NCBI GenBank assembly: GCA_965240325.2
Contig: OZ251252.1
Coordinates: 186,001-250,000, forward strand
Length of the DNA: 64,000 nt
Direction of reading: 5' to 3'
From: Rebecca billardiae RCC1528
Lineage: Eukaryota; Protista; Haptophyta
Below, piece by piece: positions 45 through 13,500 of this stretch. The notes below the pieces were generated by a model that did not search any database, was not told the DNA's origin, and saw nothing but the letters and a program-made list of their open reading frames with translations. The first letter of the stretch is position 1. Every line of letters starts with the position of its first letter. The position numbers and the translations under genes are program-made.

Positions 45-2698
45 CCTCTGACTGGATGGTGACGTCGGTGCCCATGATAGTGGTGAAGAGGAACCACGGG
101 ACGGGCAGGCCGATGAGGATGTCGAAGATGTTCGAGCCCAGCGAGGAGGACACCGCCATGTCGCCGTGCCCCTTCCGCGCGACCGCCATGCTGGAGAGGC
201 AGTCCGGGATGGACGTGCCGCCAGCCAGCAGCGTCAGCCCCATCACCGGCGCCGGGATATTCGCCGTGATGCCGAGCTCTGTCGCCATCCAGACCATGAA
301 GTAGGAGAGAAAGGCGATCCACACGATGGACATGAGGAAGGTGGCGAAGAAGAAGCGCTTGAACAGCGGGCGCCTGCAGTCCGGGATCGTCAGCCACATG
401 CTCAGCAGCAGCGGGAACGACAGCGCCCACACGAACCGACCGGTCGCAGAGCTCGGGAGTTCAAACGGATTCGACGGCTCGTTGTCGTCATCGTCCTCGC
501 CCTCGCCGCCGCCGTCGTCCGCGCCGCCGTCGGCGTCGGCGTCGGCGGGGTCGGGCCCGTGCTCCGCCGCGGCGGCGATCCCCGCCGCCACCCCGCGCCC
601 GCCGCCCGCCTCCGTGTCCTCGTCCCCCGGCGCGAACGCCCGCGGCCGCGGCCGCTCGTGCGCCGCGGCCGCTCGCACGAGCGCGTCGCCGCCGCCGTCG
701 GCGTCACCCATCGCCTCCGTGGTGAACGAGGCGTCGTCGGCGGGCACGGTGGGCACCGCGGGCACCGCGGCGGGCGCGGTCTTGCACGCGTGCGCCGGCT
801 GCGCCTCCGCCTCGGTGTTCGCGCGCGCCGCGCGCTCCCCCGCCGAGTACCGCGCCTCCGCCCCTCTCCACTCGGGCTCCGCTCGCTTAGTGAGCGCGCC
901 GAGCGCCGCCGCCGCCTTTGGCCTGTGGCCGATGGCGTGGTGGGCAGCGGCGTGGTGGTTGCCCTCCGGGGCGACGCGCACGATGGAGGGGCGGTGGCCC
1001 GAGGGCTGCACGCTCTCCCCGCCCGGCCGCTCGGCGCCGCCCAGCACCTGCTCGAAGAACGTGCGCTCCGCCGACAGGTGCACCTGCTGGCTCAGCGGGA
1101 TCGTGCCCGTGGGCGCGAGATTGAAATCTCCCTCGCGCACCTGCGTCGCGTTGTCGCGGTACGACTTTGCGAGCAGCCGGTAGAGCCGCGCGGCGCGGAG
1201 CACGCGCACGACGCGGATGAAGCGGAGCACGCGCAGCCCCGACGCCGTGCCCGAGCCCGTCCACGCCAGCTCGACGATGATCAGCAGCACGAGCACGCCG
1301 TCGAAGACGTTCAGCGCGTCCTGCCAGCACTGGAAGAACCCATAGCTGTACAGCTTGAGCGCAATCTCGGCGATGAAGATTGCGGCGCACGCGAGGTTGA
1401 CGCCTTCGAGCACGGCGGAGGCGAAGAGGTTGGAGAAGATGACCATGAAGACGTTCACCACGATCACCGCCATGATAAAGTACACGAACGGCTTCGACTC
1501 CACCAGCACCACCAGCCGCTCGCGGTGCGGCGGCCGCGGCTGCGTCTGCGCCTCGTACACCTTCCGCTCCGTCCACGCCTGCAAGGACTCGTTGTAATAC
1601 ATGATCGAGATATACCCGGCGTATAGGAAGAGCAGCGCGAGCGACTCCCACCAGGTCACCGCCTGCGCGCCGCACGCGCGGGCGCGCGAGAGCGCGCAGC
1701 CCGCCAGCCAGCCGACGCGGGGGCGCCGGGCGCACGGGTGAGCCCTCTGCCTCCGCCTCTGCCTCCGCCCGTCTCGCTCGGCAGCGCGCGCGCGCTGCGC
1801 CCGGCCGCGGGCGCGCGTCCGCCCACGCACAGGCGACGCGCCGGGCGGAGCGGCCCGCGAGGGCGTAGGGCGCACCGCGTGCGCGTGCACTGCCCACCCA
1901 GTCCACGCAGGCCGGGCCCCGCGCGGCCGCGCCGTGGCGGCGCGCGCACGACGGGCCACCGCCACGCGGACGGCGCGCGGGGCGCACCGCGCGCGCTGCC
2001 GCCGCGCCGCGGGCGGCGGTGCGCAGCACCTGGTCGGAGATGAATGCGACGAGGATGGCGATGGACGTGCAGTAGTAGACGGAGTCGCGCACGAGGGGCC
2101 ACCAGGTGAGCTGGAGGCCGGGCGCGACGAACGAGCACATCGCGATCACGAAGAGCACGTTGAAGATCGCCGAGCCCACGATCGTGCCGAAGCCGACGTC
2201 CGACTTGGCGACAAAGACGCCCATCACCGAGGTGGCGAGCTCGGGCGCGGAGCCGCCGGCCGCCATGAAGGTGGCGCCGGCGACGTCGTCCTTGAGGGCG
2301 AGCGAGTCGCAGATCTGCGACAGCGCAGCCTCGAAGTAGTCGTCGCACACGATCGCCAGCCCGAGGAACATGTAGAGCATCACGAGCACGTGCACGAGGA
2401 TCCAGCCGCGCGCCTTCTCCTCCGGGGTGAACGTGTCCTCGGGGAAGTCCGAGTCGACGACGCCGATGGGCGGGCAGGGCTGGAGCTCGGGGTCGTCTTC
2501 GAGCTGCCCGTCCAGCTGGAGAAGCCGCCTCGACGTCGCCTCGTCGGCCGTCGCGTGCGGCGCGGCCGCGCCGCCGGCCGGTCCGAGCGCGAGCTGGTAA
2601 AGGCAGACGCCGACGAGCGTGGCGACGAGCAGGCCGGCCTGCAGCGGGAGGACGCGCTCGCGCCGGCGGCGCTTGCGCACGAGGAGCGGCCCGGCCAT
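45..2698 (-). CDS. K+-dependent Na+/Ca2+ exchanger (NCKX/SLC24-like) with an inserted voltage-sensor domain; 3' end runs off the window
   Basis: ATG at 2698. Exon 1 is 2698-2030, GT-AG intron 2029-1663, exon 2 is 1662-45 (open frame), next donor GT at 44. Alpha-1 repeat GATFMAAGGSAPE...GTIVGSAIFNVL. Alpha-2 repeat GLTLLAAGTSIPD...AVSSSLGSNIFD. Four extra TM helices ending in LRVLRFIRVVRVLRAARLYRL lie at about 1515-1172. Confidence 0.92.
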
Positions 2699-3097
2699 CG
2701 CGCCGAGCCCGGCGCCGCGGGCGTGCTGCTTTGGCGGGCAGCGCCGCGCCCGGTGATCTGCCTTGCGGTTGCGTTCGCGGAGGGCAGGCTTTGCCCGCCC
2801 GGCGCCCAAGCCCGCGGGCGGCGGAGCTGATTGGCGCTGTAACTCTGTAAGTTAGGTAGATAGGTCCCATCGCCCACTATTCGCCATTAGGCGATTGGGA
2901 GCGCCGATTAGGCTCGACGGTTACGGAGCGCACCGCGATCGACGCGGGCCTATGGCGGACGGGGGTATGCGGGTAAAGTAGTGTAGTACTCACCGATAAG
3001 TGGATCCAGCGTATGATGATGGTGTCGGTCTGCCAAGCGCGACGACGGCCGGCGCGGACACCGAGCAGCCCGCAATCGCCCGGGCCAGCGCGGCCCT

Positions 3098-6000
3098 TCA
3101 GCCCGCGTCCTCCACCTCGAGGCGCGGGTCGGCGATGTCGACGCCCGCGCGCAGCTTCGTCCCGCACCCCGCCTCCTTCTCCACCGCCGCCGGGTACCGG
3201 CAGCCGAGGAACTTGACGTTGGCCCACACGACCGACAGCGCCTGCGCCTTGAGCTTGTCTTCCGAGCCCAGCGCCTCGACGCGGCCCCACCGCTCGGCGA
3301 CGTACGCGGCGCGCGCGCGGTACACGGCCATGCTCTCGCCCGGCTGCGCGCGGCGGGGTGGGCGCGGCGCGCACGCGCGTCACGCACCGCCGCCGCCGCC
3401 GCGCCGCCTCCCACGCACGTCGCACGCGCCAACAACGCACGGCCCCGCCGCGCCGCGCCGAGCGCGCGGCAAGAGCGCGCGCGCGCGAGCGAGCGCGCAC
3501 CTGCCGTCGCAGATAGTCCGGGAAGACGATGGGCGGCGGCGCGGGCTGCGGCGTCTCGTCCTGCTTCACGCCCTTCCCCTTCCGCGCCATCGCGAGCGCG
3601 TTGCTCGGCAGCGTGCCCGCCACCTGCACCGCGTCCAGCTCGCCCCAGTACCCGTCGTCCCAGACAGTCACGTCCAGCCCGATCTCAATCGCCCGACACA
3701 GGATGGCGGCGCACTTGGCCTGGGGGGCGGGGGAGGGGCGGGCACGGGCGCGTGTGCGCGCGCAAGCACGCACGCAAGCACGCGCACGAGAGGCGGCGCG
3801 GGGCGCGTGAGCGGGGGCGCGTGCCGAGGGGCAAGGCACTCGCCCCGCCGAGCGCCCGCAGCGCGCGCCGCCGCGCGCCGCGTGCCCCGCCCCCACCTGA
3901 TCCAGCTTTGGAGTGAACGCGCGCGGCTTCGCGCCCGCGGCGGCGCGCTTGGCCGCGCCGCCGCCCTTCGCCTCCCAGACGGTGACCCACTCGCGCGCGG
4001 TGCCCTTGCCGCCCGTGACCGCCGGGTCCGCCGCGAGCCGGATCGCGCACGTGTGCCCCGGGTTGAACGTCTCGTACACCGTTACGGACGTAACGACCAC
4101 CGGCCGCGCCAGCCCGATCCGCACCCACTCGCGCGAGGAGCCCGGGGCGGGCGCGGGCGCCCACGCCTGCGGGTGCGAGCCGCCGCCCGCGGCGAAGGCG
4201 ATGGGCTTGCCGAGGATGCAGCGCGCGCCGTGCTCCGCGCGGGAGAACTGCGACGAGAACCCGAGCACCGCGCTGCCGTGCTGCACCACCGCCGCGCCGC
4301 CCGCCGCGCCCACCTGCGCTGAGCCACCTCCCGGGTTGAGCGGAGACTTGGCGGCGGCGGCGCCGCCGCCGCCGCCGCCCCTGGAAGGCGGCGGCGCGCG
4401 CGGCTCGCCGGGCGAGGCGGGCGGCGCGGGCGGCGGCGGCGGCTTGGGGAAGGCGAAGGGGGCGCGCGCGCCACCGCCGCCACGCCGGGCCACGCCGCCC
4501 GCGGGCGGCGGGATCGCGGCGCCGCCGCCCGCGGGCGGCGGCGTCGCGGCGCCGCCGCCGTCGCCGCCGTCAGCGTCGGCCGCGCCGCCGGCCGGCGGCG
4601 CGCGCTCTCGCTTCGCGACGGTGAGCGCGCGCGCGGCGCCGCTGCCGCTCGACTTGGAGACGAGGCCGTGCGCGCGCGCCACGGTGTGCACGCACTTGCG
4701 CTCCTCCGCGCTCAGCTCCGCGTCGAGCGTGAGCGCCTGCGCGCCCGGGTCGGCGATAAAATTCTTGAGCAATTCCTCGACGCCCGATTTAATCGCCTTG
4801 GCGGCGGGCAGGTCGACGCAGCCGAGCCCGACGCCCTCGGGCACGGCGACGGCCTCGATGGGGGCGGCGGGGCCCTGCCGCTCCTTCCCGAGGCCCTGCC
4901 CCGGCGCCCACCCCAGCGACTTGAGCAGCTCGAAGCCGAAGCCCTCGCCCACCTCCGCCGCGCCCGCGCCCACGGTGCCGCCGGCCGCGCGCAGCGCGGC
5001 GCGGCCGAGCCGGCCGCCGCCGCCGCCGCCGCCGTCGTCGTCGCCGTCGTCGTCGTCGTCGGCCGCGTCGGCCGCGTCGGGCGCGGCCGCGCCGGGCGCG
5101 GCGGCGTCCGAGCTGCCGCCCGCCGCGCCCGCGGGCTCGTCGAACGCGTCCCCCTCCGCCGCGCCCTCCACGTGCGGCGGCAGTGTCGCCCTGACAAACC
5201 GAATGTACGGCCCCGTAACGGCCCCCGTAACGGCCCCCGTAACGGCCGCGCCCGCAGTGGGAGCGCCCGCGCCCGCCGCGGCGGCGGCGTCCGCGGCGCG
5301 CTGCGCGCCCTCCTTCGGCCGCCGCGCGCCACCGCGCCGCCCGCCCCGCCGCCCGCGGCTGCTGTCGCCGCCGCCGGCGCTCAGCTCCGCCGCCGAGTCC
5401 GAGTCTGTCGCGTCGGCGGCGGCGGCCGAGGCGCGCGTCGCCACGCCCGGCTCGCACGCGGGCGTGTTGGGCGGCGTGGCGGTGGGCCGCGGCTCGGCCG
5501 CCGCGGCGGCGAGCGCGTGCGGCGGCAGCGCCGCCTCCTCCGCCTCCTCCGCCTCCTCGCCGCCCTCGGCGTACGAACCGTCGAGCGCGCGCGGGCCGGC
5601 GCGCACGCGGAGAGCTGAGAGTGTTGCCGCCTCCTGGCCCTTGGTCGCGGCGCCGAGCTCGAGCGCGTCCGGCAGCGCCGCCGCCGCGCCGAGCACGAGC
5701 TCGAGCGCCGTCGCGCACCCGTACGCCCGCGGCGCCAGCCCCACGCCGAACCGCTGCTGGTACGCGTGCGCCAGCTGAAGGCCTGTGACGTCGACGCCCG
5801 AGCCGCGCGCGAGCACGAGCTCGACGAGCGCGGCGCCGAGGGCGGAGAGCGTGGGCGGCGGCGGCGGGCGGCCGGCGGCGGGCTTGGGCGGCGTCGCGGA
5901 TGCGCCGCCGCCGCGCCCGCCCGCCAGCATCGTCGAGACGGGCACGAGCGGCGCGTCGGGCGGCGCGGCGGCGCGCGGCGCGGCCGGCCGCCCCACGAGC

Positions 6001-6335
6001 GCCGAGGGCTGGAGCGCCGCGGGCGGCGGGGGCATGTAGGCCTGCGGCGGCATCATCGGGTACATGCCGGCGGGTGGCAGCGGAAGCATCACGCCCGGCC
6101 CGAGCTGCGGCGCCATCGGCATCGGGCCGCCGCCGCCCGCGCCGCGCGCGCCGCGGCCGCGCGCGCCGCGGCCGCGCGCGGCCGCGGGCGGCACGCTACC
6201 GCTGCCGCGGCCGCGCATGGCGGTGCGGCCGAGGCCGCGCGCGCCGCCGCGCCCGCGCGGAGCACCACCGCCACCGCACAGCTGCGTCGGCGCCGGGAGG
6301 CTGCCCACGTCTGGCGCCGCGCCGCTGCTCGACAT
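3098..6335 (-). CDS. NKRF-like RNA-processing protein: LOTUS/OST-HTH-like + G-patch + R3H + beta-sandwich + C-terminal XRN2-binding (XTBD)-like domain
   Basis: ATG at 6335, introns 3896-3720 and 3500-3344, stop at 3098. G-patch GFGFELLKSLGWAPGQGLGKERQG..EGVGLG. R3H LSAEERKCVHTVARAHGLVSKSSGSGAARAL. XTBD-like RQPGESMAVYRARAAY..ALSVVWANVKFLGCRYP. Confidence 0.8.
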
Positions 6336-6746
6336 GGCGCCGCGCGAGCCCAGGGCTGAGTGTGGCTGCTGAGCTAGCGCCGCGCGCGAGCCAGCTCCCG
6401 CCGCAAGCCGCCGCCGAGGCCGTGTCGACTGTCGAGCGAGGGGAGAGTCCGGCTCGCCGGGTTGACGAGATTCCGGGAGGAGGCGCAACTTTTCGCGCGG
6501 CGGCGTGAAAAGATCAAACGCGGCAAAGTCTGAAAATCGCGCGGCAGTCGTCGATTTCCAGGCGTGCTCGCGCAGTCGCGCGTGATTTCTCGCGAGCGGT
6601 TTGAAATAAAGACGCTTGGCGCAAAAAAGCAAGAGAATCGCAGCGCCGCCCAGCCAGCAAGGGTGGTGGCCCCGGCAAACGCAGGCCGGGCCGCGCGCGC
6701 GCCTCCGGGCACAGCCCTGAGGCAGCTGTCGGGCGCGCGCTGCCCG

Positions 6747-8396: not shown

Positions 8397-9308
8397 CGGC
8401 GGGGCCGCGCGGGGCCGCGCCATGTCAAAACGGTGCCCGCGGATCAGCGGCGGCACGTTCTGATACTGCTGTTTCGTCAATGATGGTCATGGTGGTGGCA
8501 CAGCGGCAGCGGCAGCCTGGCGCGACGATGCCGTGGCGTGAGGCGGCGTCCCGCCAGTGCGCTGTCGCAATGTTTCCTGCTCTGCGGTCAGTCGTTCGCG
8601 TGGCCCCGGTTTCAGGCCTCAGGGCCACATATAAATAAATATAATAATATATCTGCGATATTCCGATCCACATTCGCAGTCGCTCGTCGTAGCAGTGTCT
8701 GTAGCAGGCTCAGTAGGAGTCACAAGCCCACGGCCGCTGGCCGGGGCCACGGCCCGCCGGCCGGCCCGCGCCATTACAGTTTACACAGTTAGATCATCTG
8801 ATCACTGCTACTTATATGTGCTACTTATATATATAATAATATATGATGAAAAACGCGCGCTTTATTATTGATATGCTGCTGCTGATTATTCAGTTGGGCG
8901 CGACTGGCGCCGCTCATCACGCGGGTAGGTGGGCCCACTGGCTACTGTGGGATTATAGTGGCGCAGAGCGCGAGCTCATAGCGCGGTGTTCACTTTCGTC
9001 TCGAGCTGGATTCCAGCCCCATGAGATGGCCCCTGGCCTGCCTGGTAAAAAAACCAGTGGTACATGCTGTAAATATAGGGCGTAACGGTGACCCTATTTA
9101 CTTATTGGAAATGGCCTGTGACCAATGTAACGACCATGTAACGGGCGTCTTAAACGTGATATATAGGGTCGACAGACGTCACTTTGATATAGCACTAGTT
9201 GATGAGCTGATCATAGGTCTTCAGCAGCATGCACACTCATTGTCACATATACGGCGTATATGGGTACTCTGAGAATACGGGATAACGACCGTTATACCCG
9301 TGCGTTAC

Positions 9309-10542
9309 TGTCGAAGGGAATGAAGAGCCCGAAACGACTGAGCTAAATCGGTTCGCGCGAACCAATTTAGCTCAGTCGTTTCGGGCTCTTCAACTCCTCG
9401 GACATAACCGTAAGTCTCCTGTGGGACATAATAACCCCGCGAGGGGCTGTAGTCCCGTCCAGTGTTCTGACGGATTTGTTGTCGAGGTTTTTCTCTCCCC
9501 GCCTGGTCTTTCCCAGGTGTTCCACCCTGCGTGCTCGTCTGCTCTGTGGCTTCGTAGAGACTCCGTCTTTTGTGGGCGGTGAGCCCTTCTTTGCTGCTGT
9601 GGCTTTGTGAGGCTCTTTTTGTGTCTTTGTTGTTCACCCGGGCGACTGTACCCGGAGGTTGCGCGTCGCGTACCGTGCTCGTTTTTCTGTCGTCTTTCTT
9701 TGTCGGTCATCTTCTTCGTGCTCCCCTCTTTTCGTTCGTCTTTTTGCCGACTCCTCGCTTTTCATTCCCCCCCGGAGCCGCGAGGCTCTCGCGAGGTCGA
9801 AAGCGCTTCGCGTGAAAGGCCAAGAGTTGCCCGCGTCGGTCGGTCGCTGGATTCGAACAGGTGACTTTACGGTTGTGTCCGAGGAGTTGAAGAGCCCGAA
9901 ACGACTGAGCTAAATTGGTTCGCGCCAACCGATTTAGCTCAGTCGTTTCGGGCTCTTCATTCCCTTCGACACAACCGTAAAGTCACCTGTTCGAATCCAG
10001 CGACCGACCGACGCGGGCAACTCTAGTGGCCTTTCACGCGAAGCGCTTTCGACCTCGCGAGAGCCTCGCGGCTCCGGGGGGGAATGAAAAGCGAGGAGTC
10101 GGCAAAAAGACGAACGAAAGAGGGGAGCACGAAGAAGATGACCGACAAAGAAAGACGACGACCACAAAAAAAAAACGAGCACGGTCCGCGACGCGCAACC
10201 TCCGGGTACAGTCGCCCGGGTGAACAACAAAGACACAAAAAGAGCCTCACAAAGCCACAGCAGCAAAGAAGGGCTCACCGCCCACAAAAGACGGAGTCTC
10301 TACGAAGCCACAGAGCAGACGAGCACGCAGGGTGGAACACCTGGGAAAGACCAGGCGGGGAGAGAAAAACCTCGACAACAAATCCGTCAGAACACTGGAC
10401 GGGACTACAGCCCCTCGCGGGGTGTCCCACAGGAGACTTACGGTTATGTCGAAGGGAATGAAGAGCCCGAAACGACTGAGCTAAATCGGTTGGCGCGAAC
10501 CAATTTAGCTCAGTCGTTTCGGGCTCTTCAACTCCTCGGACA
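9309..10542. mobile_element. Non-autonomous palindromic element H-A-H'-A'-H with 96-bp hairpin units, TG..CA termini and GTTAC target-site duplication
   Basis: H1 9309-9404, H2 9876-9971 (inverted), H3 10447-10542. A 9405-9875 and A' 9972-10446 are diverged reverse complements. GTTAC occurs at 9304-9308 and 10543-10547. Confidence 0.88.
9935..9998 (+). promoter_or_regulatory. tRNA-derived Pol III type-2 promoter (A box + B box); a mirror copy lies on the minus strand at 9912-9849
   Basis: A box TAGCTCAGTCG at 9935-9945 with D-arm GCTC/GGGC. B box GTTCGAATCC at 9989-9998. Confidence 0.6.
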
Positions 10543-13500
10543 GTTACATATACACCGCCATGCTGATCAGCATGGCTACCATAGTATTTCAGACTGTTTC
10601 AGACTGCTCTCGTAGCAACCGTACGGCGTGCATGTGACACCTAAGAATTTTTCCAACCCTTCTACTCTCGAAGGACGAGTCTTAAGGAGCCGTGGGCAAA
10701 GATTGAGCCTAGCCGAGTCGCGGCGCCAGCCCGCCGGCCGTGGTCAAGGCAAGCAGGAGTGGGGCACGCGGCGCCGGGCACATCCAGCAGCCTGCAGCTT
10801 GAACACGGCGGACAAGGTTCGTCGAGTGCTCATCTGTGGCGTTCAAGGCAGGCACTGCTACGCATCGAATGCCTTTTCGCGTGCTCCGACCTAACCGTTG
10901 CTCTACATTGCGACCAAGCTGTGTCCGAGCTGTCCTCAGCTGGACCGTCCTCTGCCTAACTGTGCGCAACGGCCGATTCGTCGCAGCGCCGAGCTGGCTC
11001 GCCGTGGTGTGCGCGCGCGTAGCGATGTGCACTCATCACCGCTTCCTGCGTGGCAGCAGGGCAAGATATGGCTCACTGGTAAGCTGGTACGCCTGCTGAC
11101 CGTGCACCGGCGTCGGTGGCGCCGCCAACGTGCTCGGGCAGGCTCACGAAGGGCTTAAATCACTGTTGAACGGATCAACTGTACTGTCCGCAGCGAGCAC
11201 GGCGCACAGCGGATGACCAAGCAGAGGCGGGGCGACTGCTGTGCGGCCGCGCGGGGGAGTAGCTAGGCTCTTGAGGTACGCGTAGAGCCATGACAGGGCT
11301 CAACAAGCGCATCAGCTGCAATCTACCCGGCTCGACGCGCAGCCCGACCTCGTGCAATCGTGTGGCTCGAGGCCCTCCAAGTGGCTCGTAGCTTCCAAAC
11401 ACCTGAGGAGCGTCGGCACTGAGAGTTGAGTCGAGGCCGGGGAGGTGACAGACGGCACACGCATCCGCTTTGACCGCTGTTTGACCATCAGATCCTTCCC
11501 CAAGTGCCCACGATCGTGTGAACAGCCCCAGCGTTCGGCCACACCGCACAGACTTCCGGGGACCTGACCGACGAGGCGGGCCTCCGCAGGGCCGCAGAAG
11601 TAGCTGGGCATTGCCAGGACACCATGCAGATGCTGTCCCAGTAACGTCCCGGAGTGTCCCAGTTCGTTCACGGGTGTCCCAAGCTCGCGTTGTGCACGCA
11701 TTACAATCCCCAAAGCTGTTCCCGTGTTTGAACGCGCGACTGTCGGCGAGAGATGGCAGACCGGGAAGATGACCCAGGTATGAACCGTTCGCATGGCTCG
11801 TTCCAGAAGGCTACGCAGCATGCCACGGGCGTGCGGCGCAGCGTGCCTCGCATGGCAGGCGGGCAAGCGCGGCGGACAACGCGCTGACGACGCGCACAGG
11901 TCCATCCCGGTCATCGTTTTCGCGATCGATCGGCTTCCCGGACCGGGAGTTCGGCGGCCTGGAAAAAGGGACTTCAGCGCGAGGAAAAGAGCACGGCTGC
12001 GGTCCGAAAAAGCCAGAGAGATTGTGTTTTCATTTTTTAATTGCTGTGGGCCCACCTAAGTCGCGGGCAGCGTCGATGATGGGCGCTTGGCGCGCGCACG
12101 GGGGTGAAAATCCCATTTTCTGGCCTGTCCGGGCGGAAAATCCGGCTGCTCAGATCTGACCGGACCGGGACCCGGACAGCACAGTATCTAGGGACCAGAC
12201 ACTTTTACATCTTCGTTCTCTTCGGATTTGAGCATGGGGCGGCGCCCCATTTGCACAGTCAAAAGACCGCGGGTGTAAAAGCAACCGTTGTCGAGTTCGA
12301 TGTAGCGGCTGGGCGAATTAGTGAATAAAAAAACAATTCACGCGAGACACTTGCGCCCACGGCCGCGATGGCGTGCGCCGTCCACCCACGACGGAGTCGT
12401 GGACGGACATCGCTACACAGCCTACGCGACAGGCGTTGTCGTGATCGAGGTGCCCGTGCCCCTTGTCGATAGCCAAACGATTGGCACGACGACCTGGCAC
12501 CACATCCGCGTCAAGCGCGGCGAGGCCGTGGTCCAGCGCGTGTGCGGCAAGCTGGCCGATGTGCGGACGGCGTCGGGTGGCGCAGGGGCTCCTGCCGATG
12601 CTACCTGGCGGCTGCTGCGGGGCCTGCTGCCGTGGTCGAACCTGAGGCAGAGGGTGAGTCAACCGCGAAGCAGCTCAACGCTTCCGAGATCGAGCTGCGC
12701 GCGGTCGGACCAGATGACGGCCCGCGGCCGTCCAAGCGCACACGCAAGGACGCCTGAGCACACGCGTTCAGTCCGAGCAAAGCCTGGTCGGCGTACGAGC
12801 GCGAGCCAGCTCAGACACGGCACGAGCGCACGCGTGACGGCTCGTACGATGAGCTCGTCGGCTTGGTCATCGGGCTGCTGTCGCTCGTCGCCTCGCTTGT
12901 CACGTCACACTCAGCTGAGCAGAGACATCACTCCCGCCGTTCAGCTGATCGACGAGGACGAGGCGGCCAAGGCGGCGGCGGCTCAAAGGCCTGGAGGAGG
13001 AGCGCAGGAGGAGGAGGAGCTCCCAGCGCTGAGCCTGTGGGGCCGCGCCGAGGCCAGGCACCGCGGCCAGCGGCTGCAGTAGCGGGTGGCTGCCGGACAG
13101 CAGCTTGGCGGCACACGCTCACTCTTACGTCGATCCTCTTGCTCGAGAGTCAAGGCGGCTGGCAAGGTGCAGGCCGCACGCAAGCTTGCTGAGCGTGCGC
13201 AGGCCGAGCCGCAGCTGAGCCCTGAGGGTGCTCGGGACGCCGCGTGCGCAAGCAGGCCGCCTCGCAGCAGATGATGCTTCGCATACTGTAGTGAACTACG
13301 CTGATACTACGACCCGAAAAAATTTCTTCGCACTACGTGCGCGCTTTATTCCCTTTATTGTTTTATTCCTTATACATCGCGTATTAAATACCGCTTTTCC
13401 GCCTCCCCAGTGCAGAATAAGTGCGCCAGAAAATGGGAATTCCACCCACGGCGTGGGGCGCTGCGGCCGACGAGCTGCCGTGCGAAGCCGGTGCGTTGCT

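What the first reader, a model, noticed from the sequence alone, without database searches (positions are those of the whole stretch)
1172..1515. NCKX-type Na+/Ca2+-K+ exchanger with a complete voltage-sensor domain in its central loop: candidate voltage-gated Ca2+ exchanger
Seen in sequence: after splicing 2029-1663, the exchanger's TM5 (WWESLALLFLYAGYISIMYYN) continues in the same exon and frame into four helices. These are S1 (VESKPFVYFIMAVIVVNVFMV), S2 (NLACAAIFIAEIALKLYSYG, with the FxxE..K charge-transfer motif), S3 (WQDALNVFDGVLVLLIIVE, with the NxxD motif) and S4 (LRVLRFIRVVRVLRAARLYRL, seven Arg at every third position). No S5-P-S6 pore follows. The frame stays open through a low-complexity linker to the alpha-2 repeat, which keeps both NCKX aspartates (GTSIPD, GSNIFD). 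Established: canonical NCX/NCKX proteins have a soluble loop here and no VSD. A pore-less VSD controlling a transporter is known for the sperm Na+/H+ exchanger SLC9C1, and a VSD controls an enzyme in voltage-sensing phosphatases. Inference: this is an independently evolved voltage-regulated Ca2+ exchanger, possibly for Ca2+ clearance after algal action potentials. I know of no characterised example. The ORF track misses this frame.
Basis: partly seen in the sequence, partly recalled or inferred. Interest (0 to 1): 0.92.

Follow-up and report, generated by a model that had tools for sequence, protein, structure and literature searches.

The report
Calcium exchanger with built-in voltage sensor
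This alga has a gene for a sodium/calcium-potassium exchanger with a complete, pore-less voltage sensor built into its middle; about 90 related proteins from several groups of marine protists share the design, no paper I could search describes it, and it may let membrane voltage switch calcium export on or off.

Summary
On the minus strand, exon 1 (2698-2030) encodes TM0-TM4 with the alpha-1 repeat. A GT..AG intron (2029-1663) is removed in phase. One continuous exon (1662-45) then encodes TM5, a full S1-S4 voltage-sensor domain (VSD), a 230-residue acidic linker, and TM6-TM9 with the alpha-2 repeat. The C-terminus lies beyond the window's left edge.

Pfam gives Na_Ca_ex, Ion_trans (profile positions 2-110 only) and Na_Ca_ex. 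NCBIfam places both halves with K+-dependent exchangers (NCKX). No pore segment follows S4.

About 90 protein clusters share the architecture. They include an intronless genomic ORF and complete transcripts from labyrinthulomycetes, euglenids, a cercozoan and haptophytes. The charge-transfer residues and six S4 charges are nearly invariant in 44 members. A tree of the exchanger core is compatible with a single origin.

AlphaFold models are confident, and every top PDB match of the window's insert is a voltage sensor. No solved structure, AlphaFold DB cluster or searchable paper describes this fusion.

Voltage control of transport is inferred, not shown, and its polarity is unknown. No RNA reads were available for this genome.

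I rate it a new variant of a known kind: a voltage-sensor-coupled carrier, as in SLC9C1.

The parts
2030..2698 (-). Exon 1 (223 aa): start Met, signal-anchor TM0, extracellular stretch, TM1-TM4 with the alpha-1 repeat (GGSAPE)
   Evidence: Translation. Pfam Na_Ca_ex 1.1e-21 at aa 104-204. TIGR00927 2e-55. GC by codon position .69/.45/.97.
1663..2029 (-). Intron, 367 nt, GT..AG, phase 0
   Evidence: Read from the sequence. The junction reproduces the homologues' spacing. No codon periodicity.89/.84/.84.
45..1662 (-). Exon 2 (539 aa plus 1 base): TM5, voltage sensor, linker, TM6-TM9. Probable donor GAGG|GTGAGC at 45/44. The rest of the gene is outside the window.
   Evidence: Homologues continue for about 55 more residues after the aligned ...IQSEG.
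1594..1653 (-). TM5 of the exchanger (WWESLALLFLYAGYISIMYY)
   Evidence: Y14, Y17, M21 and N24 are invariant.
1441..1503 (-). Voltage sensor S1 (aa 54-74; Asn70 conserved in 43/44)
1339..1398 (-). Voltage sensor S2 (aa 89-108; Phe96 aromatic in 44/44, Glu99 in 44/44, Lys103 in 43/44)
1270..1326 (-). Voltage sensor S3 (aa 113-131; Asn118, Asp121 in 44/44, Glu131)
1174..1236 (-). Voltage sensor S4 (aa 143-163; Arg144, 147, 150, 153, 156, 159, 162)
   Evidence: Positions R1-R6 are basic in at least 41/44 members.
478..1167 (-). Post-S4 segment with a semi-conserved D-x-x-TQ motif, then a low-complexity Ala/Gly/Glu/Asp/Pro linker ending in an acidic run. It has no TM segment.
   Evidence: Codon periodicity .81/.59/.95 in the same frame.
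46..477 (-). TM6-TM9 with the alpha-2 repeat (GTSIPD ... GSNIFD)
   Evidence: Pfam Na_Ca_ex 7e-23 at aa 438-526. TIGR00927 1.5e-56. Invariant columns.

Best explanation
The gene encodes one polypeptide: a K+-dependent Na+/Ca2+ exchanger (NCKX/SLC24-like, CaCA fold). A complete four-helix S1-S4 voltage sensor of the Cav/Nav/BacNav type is inserted about 30 residues after TM5, at the start of the cytoplasmic loop that separates the two inverted halves of the carrier.

The sensor has an even number of helices and begins and ends in the cytoplasm, so the exchanger's topology is preserved.

I propose that S4 moves with membrane potential, as in channels, voltage-sensing phosphatases and SLC9C1. This movement would reach the exchanger either through contacts within the membrane or through the conserved segment just after S4. 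It would change the rate of Ca2+/K+ for Na+ exchange, or permit it at all.

Shown here: the architecture, the conservation of the sensor's functional residues, the fold, and the family. Inferred: that voltage controls transport. The polarity is open. The exchanger could be switched on by depolarisation to clear Ca2+ that entered through voltage-gated channels. Or it could be switched off during depolarisation and released on repolarisation.
For: Domain order Na_Ca_ex - Ion_trans(2-110/241) - Na_Ca_ex. NCKX subfamily is the best hit for both halves.

The SAPE Glu of alpha-1 and both Asp of alpha-2 are invariant in 78 aligned exchangers, with and without the sensor, and all three are present in the window.

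By sequence the sensor is closest to Cav2 domain IV (best single domains 36-42 bits), Cav3 and NavMs (45 bits). It scores lower against TPTE2 and TPC1.

The AF2 model of the window's own sensor has pLDDT 86 and pTM 0.74. Its top 50 PDB matches are all voltage sensors: Cav1.1 TM 0.71, CatSper 0.68 at rmsd 2.2, Ci-VSP TM 0.72 by target.

The full-length homologue P0008 models at pLDDT 80.6 and pTM 0.74, with the sensor residues above 90.

Family: 72 of 193 fetched proteins hold the sensor. About 90 clusters with PF00520+PF01699 score 700-954 bits, followed by a gap down to ordinary NCKX at 634 bits or less.

P0008 is a single uninterrupted 735-codon ORF in a genome assembly. Complete transcripts come from Mucochytrium, Urceolus, Petalomonas and Mataza.

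Purifying selection on the sensor: E99 and D121 in 44/44, an aromatic residue at 96 in 44/44, K103 in 43/44, and S4 R1-R6 basic in at least 41/44, while the linker is not alignable.

A single origin is not rejected: 2 changes on the free tree against 26 for shuffled labels, and AU p 0.565 with the constrained tree better by 5.4 lnL.

Precedent for a voltage-gated carrier: SLC9C1 (PMC6052114; PMC13095418).
Against: There are no functional data of any kind.

No RNA or DNA reads were listed for this genome. The transcript structure here rests on homology and codon statistics.

The C-terminus is outside the window.

An intact S4 does not guarantee voltage gating. CNG channels carry a sensor but are not voltage-gated (stated in PMC6052114).

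S4 is joined to TM6 only through a long, disordered, poorly conserved linker. The coupling route is therefore not obvious.

Model coordinates and PAE were not available to me. The sensor-to-core interface is inferred only from the global pTM.
Confidence: 0.6

Rival explanations
1. The sensor fold is kept but no longer gates transport by voltage. It would serve as a structural, lipid-facing, oligomerisation or targeting module, as the voltage-insensitive sensors of CNG channels do.
For: Such cases exist (PMC6052114 mentions CNG channels; TMEM266 has no known function, PMC13095418). The S4-to-TM6 linker is long and disordered, so mechanical coupling is not evident.
Against: The whole charge-transfer centre and six S4 charges are nearly invariant across 44 diverged members from several eukaryotic supergroups. 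A mere scaffold would not be expected to keep them.
Confidence: 0.17
2. The sensor senses voltage but its output is not the exchanger. It might conduct protons or ions itself (Hv1-like or omega current), or signal to another protein, with the exchanger acting only as an anchor that places it next to the Ca2+ export sites.
For: Voltage sensors can conduct on their own (Hv1; PMC13095418). The same genome is reported to hold other sensor-enzyme fusions (earlier notes s1-336722 and s1-341161, not checked here), which suggests the sensor is used as a versatile module.
Against: The conserved mid-S1 polar residue is Asn, not the Asp that Hv1 selectivity needs (PMC4429351). S4 has an unbroken run of 6-7 charges with no gap that would open a gating pore. 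The tight 30-residue tether to TM5 is conserved. pTM 0.74 suggests one compact assembly.
Confidence: 0.15
3. Gene-model artefact in this genome. The sensor would belong to another transcript or be removed by splicing, or the locus would be a pseudogene, so no fusion protein is made here.
For: No reads could be laid. GC-rich DNA keeps frames open by chance. The gene is cut by the window edge.
Against: TM5, the sensor, the linker and alpha-2 share one frame with strong third-position GC bias throughout. The same order occurs in an intronless ORF and in complete transcripts of other species. All catalytic and sensor residues are intact.
Confidence: 0.04

Closest known systems
SLC9C1 (sperm-specific Na+/H+ exchanger gated by an S4 voltage sensor and cAMP)
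   Same: A secondary ion exchanger carrying a pore-less S1-S4 sensor with about seven S4 charges. The sensor resembles those of Nav/Cav channels. Voltage gating of transport is proven for SLC9C1 (PMC6052114; PMC13095418).
   Different: The carrier fold differs (NhaP-type 13-14 TM against CaCA 5+5 TM). In SLC9C1 the sensor is appended after the transport domain and followed by a cyclic-nucleotide-binding domain. Here it is inserted between the two halves of the carrier, and Pfam found no such domain. SLC9C1 is an animal sperm protein; this one is from protists. Function is untested here.
Animal NCKX1-5 (SLC24) exchangers
   Same: Best-matching subfamily. The alpha-1 Glu and both alpha-2 Asp are kept. 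There is a signal-anchor TM0, a 5+5 TM layout and an acidic run before TM6. AlphaFold DB cluster matches are NCKX proteins.
   Different: Animal NCKX have a soluble cytoplasmic loop with no membrane domain. Ordinary NCKX score 634 bits or less against the fusion-family profile, while members score 700-954.
Voltage-sensing phosphatases (Ci-VSP/TPTE)
   Same: A non-channel effector under a pore-less sensor. The Ci-VSP sensor matches the model at TM 0.72 by target, rmsd 2.8. TPTE2 scores 3.7e-6 by sequence.
   Different: The effector is a soluble enzyme attached after S4, and the sequence similarity is lower than to Cav/Nav sensors.
NCX1 (SLC8) with CBD1/CBD2 in the central loop
   Same: The same loop after TM5 is the site where a regulatory module is inserted into a CaCA exchanger. 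Fold matches to NCX1 and NCLX cover the core.
   Different: NCX regulators are soluble Ca2+-binding domains, and NCX is K+-independent. By sequence this protein is much closer to NCKX.

Membership tests
CaCA superfamily / NCKX (SLC24) exchangers | Two Na_Ca_ex (alpha-1, alpha-2) repeats in one chain | tested here: met
   Pfam PF01699 1.1e-21 (exon 1) and 7.1e-23 (exon 2), both above the 24.9-bit cut-off.
CaCA superfamily / NCKX (SLC24) exchangers | Closer to the K+-dependent subfamily than to NCX or CAX | tested here: met
   TIGR00927 2e-55 and 1.5e-56, against TIGR00845 (NCX1) 9e-13 and 5e-9. The curated whole-protein cut-off of TIGR00927 (710 bits, a 1209-position model built on long animal proteins) is not reached by the pieces, nor by full-length P0001 (405 bits).
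CaCA superfamily / NCKX (SLC24) exchangers | Ion-site residues: Glu of alpha-1 (SAPE), Asp of GTSxPD and Asp of GSNxFD. From my memory of NCKX2 work, the last Asp is linked to K+ dependence. | tested here: met
   Present in the window. The columns are invariant in 78 aligned exchangers.
CaCA superfamily / NCKX (SLC24) exchangers | Complete 5+5 TM core | tested here: inconclusive
   TM1-TM9 are seen. The last two helices lie beyond the window's edge but are present in all full-length homologues.
CaCA superfamily / NCKX (SLC24) exchangers | K+-dependent electrogenic Na+/Ca2+ exchange | not testable with these tools
   Needs transport assays.
S1-S4 voltage-sensor domain (Ion_trans N-terminal half) | Profile match restricted to S1-S4 and above the curated threshold | tested here: met
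   PF00520 65-69 bits against a cut-off of 25, profile positions 2-110 of 241.
S1-S4 voltage-sensor domain (Ion_trans N-terminal half) | S4 with basic residues at every third position | tested here: met
   Seven Arg at 144-162. R1-R6 are basic in at least 41/44 family members.
S1-S4 voltage-sensor domain (Ion_trans N-terminal half) | Gating charge transfer centre: aromatic and acidic residues in S2, acidic residue in S3 | tested here: met
   F96, E99 and D121 are present and conserved in 44/44 (F or Y at 96). The feature is as described in PMC13095418.
S1-S4 voltage-sensor domain (Ion_trans N-terminal half) | Four-helix sensor fold | tested here: met
   AF2 pLDDT 86.2. The top 50 Foldseek PDB hits are all voltage sensors, TM by query 0.52-0.71.
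S1-S4 voltage-sensor domain (Ion_trans N-terminal half) | Charge movement in response to voltage | not testable with these tools
   Needs gating-current or voltage-clamp fluorimetry measurements.
Voltage-gated cation channels (6TM) | S5-P-loop-S6 pore after S4 | tested here: not met
   The Pfam match stops at profile position 110. There is no hydrophobic segment between S3/S4 and TM6.
SLC9C1-type voltage-gated carriers | [quoted passage not shown] | tested here: not met
   Only Na_Ca_ex and Ion_trans were found, and the sensor is internal, not C-terminal. This is an analogue, not a member.
Hv1 proton channels | Asp in mid-S1 as selectivity filter (PMC4429351), and a short S4 with three Arg (from memory) | tested here: not met
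   The mid-S1 polar residue is Asn70 (43/44), and S4 has seven Arg.

The most novel reading that the evidence does not exclude
This is an independently evolved second class of voltage-gated secondary transporter. A Cav/Nav-type voltage sensor sits between the two inverted repeats of a CaCA exchanger and directly gates alternating access. That would give excitable marine protists (haptophytes, labyrinthulomycetes, euglenids, cercozoans) a Ca2+ extrusion system switched by membrane potential on the time scale of their action potentials.
Probability: 0.5. Interest if true: 0.88.

Novelty: new variant of a known kind. Interest (0 to 1): 0.78.

Why it matters
According to the reviews I read, voltage sensors control only two kinds of protein other than channels: voltage-sensing phosphatases and the sperm exchanger SLC9C1 (PMC13095418, PMC6052114).

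A second, unrelated carrier family that acquired a sensor would show that voltage gating of transporters is a recurring evolutionary solution. It would also provide a compact natural system (about 700 residues, no cyclic-nucleotide domain) for asking how S4 movement couples to an alternating-access cycle.

It would add a missing element to Ca2+ signalling in marine protists, whose voltage-gated channels are already studied.

It could also serve as a template for engineering voltage-controlled Ca2+ extrusion tools.

The family is already in public databases under generic exchanger names, so it can be tested at once.

Tried and rejected
- **Read evidence.** I asked look-up of sequencing runs twice, once for the whole gene with RNA runs and once for 1000-1662 with any kind of run. 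None was listed (one search failed because the machine was busy). Read laying could therefore not be used, and the splice and transcript continuity in this genome stay unverified by reads.
- **Rfam.** A search of the whole window gave no match.
- **AlphaFold DB clusters.** The best matches are ordinary NCKX proteins, TM by query 0.52 or less. No cluster representative has the fused architecture.
- **PDB, by sequence and by fold.** No chain combines a CaCA core with a voltage sensor.
- **Literature.** Eight searches ran, combining voltage sensor or sensing domain with NCKX, SLC24, exchanger, protist, coccolithophore and the Pfam names. None found a description of the fusion. Two further calls failed on term syntax.
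- **Own protein.** The window's own predicted protein was not found in the 5.8-billion-protein collection. The best identity was 69% over part of the query. I did not determine the species.
- **Channel fragment, rejected.** There is no pore, and the exchanger halves flank the sensor in one frame.
- **Hv1-like proton channel, rejected.** S1 has Asn rather than Asp, and S4 has seven Arg.
- **Hidden intron in the long linker, considered.** Nine in-frame GTR..YAG pairs exist. However, codon periodicity is uniform across the linker. Any such intron would also leave the architecture unchanged.
- **Not possible.** I could not inspect model coordinates or PAE, so I cannot describe the sensor-to-core interface.
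Full report
**What is in the sequence**

The region is about 73% G+C. The gene lies on the minus strand.

- Exon 1 runs from the ATG at 2698 to 2030 (223 codons). It encodes a basic N-terminus, a signal-anchor helix, an acidic extracellular stretch and TM1-TM4, including AGATFMAAGGSAPE...GTIVGSAIFNVLFV.
- The exon ends ...ISDQ next to a GT. The intron (2029-1663, 367 nt) ends in AG.
- Exon 2 starts at 1662 in phase 0. It stays open for 539 codons to position 46.
- At that point GAGG|GTGAGC offers a donor, with exon end at 45 in phase 1. Homologues continue for about 55 more residues (two TM helices) after the aligned ...IQSEG. The gene therefore runs off the left edge of the window.
- This also explains why the mechanical ORF list lacks the frame: ORFs that run off an end are not listed.

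**Content of exon 2**

- TM5: WWESLALLFLYAGYISIMYY.
- A roughly 30-residue basic connector.
- S1: aa 54-74.
- S2: aa 89-108, containing F96, E99 and K103.
- S3: aa 113-131, containing N118, D121 and E131.
- S4: aa 143-163, with Arg at 144, 147, 150, 153, 156, 159 and 162.
- A 230-residue Ala/Gly/Glu/Asp/Pro-rich linker ending in an acidic run.
- TM6-TM9 with GTSIPD and GSNIFD.

All quoted peptides are present as written.

**Is it more than chance?**

- Pfam finds Na_Ca_ex in exon 1 (1.1e-21). In exon 2 it finds Ion_trans (7.5e-18; 65 bits against a cut-off of 25), matching only profile positions 2-110 of 241, which is S1-S4. It also finds Na_Ca_ex (7.1e-23).
- A Kyte-Doolittle scan finds no hydrophobic segment between S3/S4 and TM6, so no pore follows.
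- Open frames are cheap in GC-rich DNA, so I checked codon-position G+C:
  - exon 1: .69/.45/.97
  - TM5 plus sensor: .61/.38/.95
  - linker: .81/.59/.95
  - alpha-2: .50/.49/.92
  - intron: .89/.84/.84, with no periodicity
- All coding segments are in the one proposed frame. The linker is therefore coding, and it shares a frame with both flanks.
- The exon 1/exon 2 junction reproduces the homologues' spacing exactly: DQ, then 6 residues, then E-x-x-x-L-L.

**What kind of exchanger**

NCBIfam ranks TIGR00927 (K+-dependent Na+/Ca2+ exchanger) first for both halves, at 2e-55 and 1.5e-56. NCX1 (TIGR00845) scores only 9e-13 and 5e-9.

The alpha-1 Glu and both alpha-2 Asp are invariant in an alignment of 78 exchangers with and without the insert. 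All three are present in the window.

**What kind of sensor**

- By sequence the insert is closest to the sensors of Cav2 channels. The whole-chain E-value is 5e-21, summed over four domains. The best single domain is DIV at 36-42 bits.
- It is also close to Cav3 and to the bacterial channel NavMs (45 bits for its single domain). Nav channels follow.
- TPTE2 (3.7e-6) and TPC1 are weaker.
- It therefore belongs to the Cav/Nav/BacNav branch. I cannot say which member is the donor.
- An AlphaFold2 model of the window's own insert, built with 42 family sequences, has mean pLDDT 86.2 and pTM 0.74.
- Its 50 best Foldseek matches in the PDB are all voltage sensors: Cav1.1 at TM 0.71, CatSper at 0.68 and rmsd 2.2 Å, and the isolated Ci-VSP sensor at TM 0.72 by target and rmsd 2.8 Å.

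**A family, not a one-off**

- A first search with exon 2 returned 29 proteins annotated with both PF00520 and PF01699.
- The exhaustive representative search, followed by a local phmmer run, found the sensor in 72 of 193 fetched proteins. Of these, 66 have alpha-1, sensor and alpha-2.
- A profile of 43 full-length members retrieved about 90 clusters at 700-954 bits. The next scores, for ordinary NCKX, are 634 bits or less.
- P0008 is one uninterrupted 735-codon ORF on a contig of NCBI assembly GCA_014466315.1. No splicing model is needed to obtain the fusion there.
- Many members sit on 2.2-3 kb contigs that look like transcripts.
- Named sources:
  - Hondaea fermentalgiana (GBG25547.1, auto-named 'Sodium/potassium/calcium exchanger 1')
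  - Mucochytrium quahogii (MMETSP transcript, 'type:complete')
  - the euglenids Urceolus cornutus and Petalomonas cantuscygni (Pfam Ion_trans 8e-15 in the latter)
  - the cercozoan Mataza sp. D1
  - haptophytes, according to the ESM Atlas cluster 'Ion transport protein/Sodium/calcium exchanger protein domain-containing...' (71 members)
- These complete transcripts are the best available substitute for RNA evidence from this genome. No sequencing run was listed for it.

**Selection on the sensor**

Counts are across the window plus 43 members:

| Position | Conservation |
|---|---|
| S1 Asn70 | 43/44 |
| S2 Asn89 | 43/44 |
| Aromatic at 96 | 44/44 |
| Glu99 | 44/44 |
| Lys103 | 43/44 (the other is Arg) |
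| S3 Asp121 | 44/44 |
| Glu131 | 43/44 |
| S4 positions R1-R6 basic | 41-44 of 44 |

The linker cannot be aligned. These conserved residues form the hydrophobic constriction / charge-transfer centre, as reviewed in PMC13095418.

**Origin**

I built a maximum-likelihood tree from the exchanger core only, with the sensor and linker columns removed.

- Forty of the 44 sensor-bearing proteins fall in one group (SH-aLRT 83). Four (P0056, P0069, P0077, P0079) fall elsewhere.
- The sensor label needs 2 changes on this tree, against a mean of 26 for shuffled labels.
- Forcing all 44 together gave a tree 5.4 log-likelihood units better than the free search had found, with AU p 0.565.
- One insertion event is therefore compatible with the data.
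- The spread over stramenopiles, Rhizaria, haptophytes and euglenids implies either great age or lateral spread. I did not test which.

**Whole-protein model**

P0008, modelled with 77 relatives, gave mean pLDDT 80.6 and pTM 0.74. The sensor (residues 313-436) is above 90. Only the N-terminal stretch and the linker are disordered.

About a fifth of the chain is disordered. A pTM this high therefore suggests that the sensor and the core are predicted as one assembly. That is an inference, because I had no access to coordinates or PAE.

Foldseek matched the core to NCLX, NCX1 and NCX_Mj, and the insert to Cav/Nav sensors. No solved chain has both. AlphaFold DB clusters returned only ordinary NCKX.

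**How it most likely works**

From established knowledge of CaCA topology, TM5 ends in the cytoplasm and TM6 starts there. Every known sensor begins and ends in the cytoplasm. A four-helix insert therefore preserves the topology of both parts, with S4 in its normal orientation in the membrane field.

NCKX transport is electrogenic (4 Na+ against 1 Ca2+ plus 1 K+, from textbook knowledge), so it already has a shallow thermodynamic voltage dependence. A sensor with six to seven gating charges would add a steep, switch-like dependence.

Two coupling routes are conceivable:
- Contacts within the membrane between the sensor and the core, given that the tether to TM5 is short and conserved.
- The semi-conserved segment directly after S4 (D-x-x-TQ, a short helix in the model) acting on the cytoplasmic face. 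By analogy, the start of the same loop regulates NCX1 through its XIP region (from memory).

The direction of gating cannot be read from the sequence. SLC9C1 opens on hyperpolarisation, according to PMC13095418. As far as I remember, voltage-sensing phosphatases act on depolarisation.

I give about 0.6 to voltage regulation of exchange. The rivals are a voltage-insensitive structural role (0.17), a sensor output unrelated to the exchanger (0.15) and an artefact of the gene model (0.04).

**Comparison with what is known**

The 2024 review of voltage sensors lists channels, Hv1, TMEM266, voltage-sensing phosphatases and SLC9C1, and nothing like this protein. [quoted passage not shown]

Work on Emiliania huxleyi noted several NCKX paralogues, one of them specific to calcifying cells. 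In the passages that mention NCKX it says nothing of a voltage sensor.

Eight full-text searches found no description of the fusion. That library omits most subscription journals, so absence there is not proof.

The protein is an analogue of SLC9C1, not a member of its family. The carrier fold differs, the sensor is inserted rather than appended, and there is no cyclic-nucleotide-binding domain.

Earlier notes of this scan report that the same gene was flagged from the overlapping window (s1-357862). They also report that this genome holds sensor-phosphodiesterase and sensor-cyclase fusions (s1-336722, s1-341161). I did not check the latter two.

**Verdict**

The architecture is real and conserved, and as far as I could search it is undescribed. 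The proposed function is plausible and directly testable, but untested. I class it as a new variant of a known kind and score its interest at 0.78.

Noticed in passing
window 2880-6632 (-): The next open frame upstream on the same strand carries a G-patch (1.5e-12) and an R3H domain (3.5e-10) within very GC-rich, low-complexity sequence. It is probably a separate multi-exon RNA-binding protein gene.
   Followed up: partly
P0251 (Aureococcus anophagefferens, 907 aa) and AlphaFold DB entry A0A7S3JVX2: Other protist NCKX-like proteins carry different extra modules. One has NudC-N plus a CS domain at the N-terminus. Another is auto-named 'EF-hand domain-containing protein'. NCKX proteins in protists seem to pick up regulatory domains often. 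P0251 could also be a merged gene model.
   Followed up: partly
P0056, P0069, P0077, P0079: These four sensor-bearing exchangers sit apart from the other 40 in the free tree of the exchanger core. The AU test does not reject uniting them with the rest. They could reflect a second insertion, a loss in the intervening lineages, or tree error.
   Followed up: partly
P0003 and P0007 (S4); P0001 (S3-S4 loop): The Hondaea-type members lack three residues (one basic position) of S4. P0001 has an insertion of about 24 residues in the S3-S4 loop. This natural variation could tune voltage dependence.
   Followed up: no
window 478-1167 (-): The window's linker (230 aa) is about twice as long as in most homologues and extremely Ala/Gly-rich. 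Codon periodicity says it is coding, but nine in-frame GTR..YAG pairs mean a small in-frame intron cannot be excluded without RNA.
   Followed up: partly
window 9304-10547: Earlier first-reader notes (s1-363218, s1-363382) flag a hairpin-ended inverted-dimer element with tRNA-derived promoters here. My whole-window Rfam search at gathering thresholds found nothing anywhere in the window.
   Followed up: no
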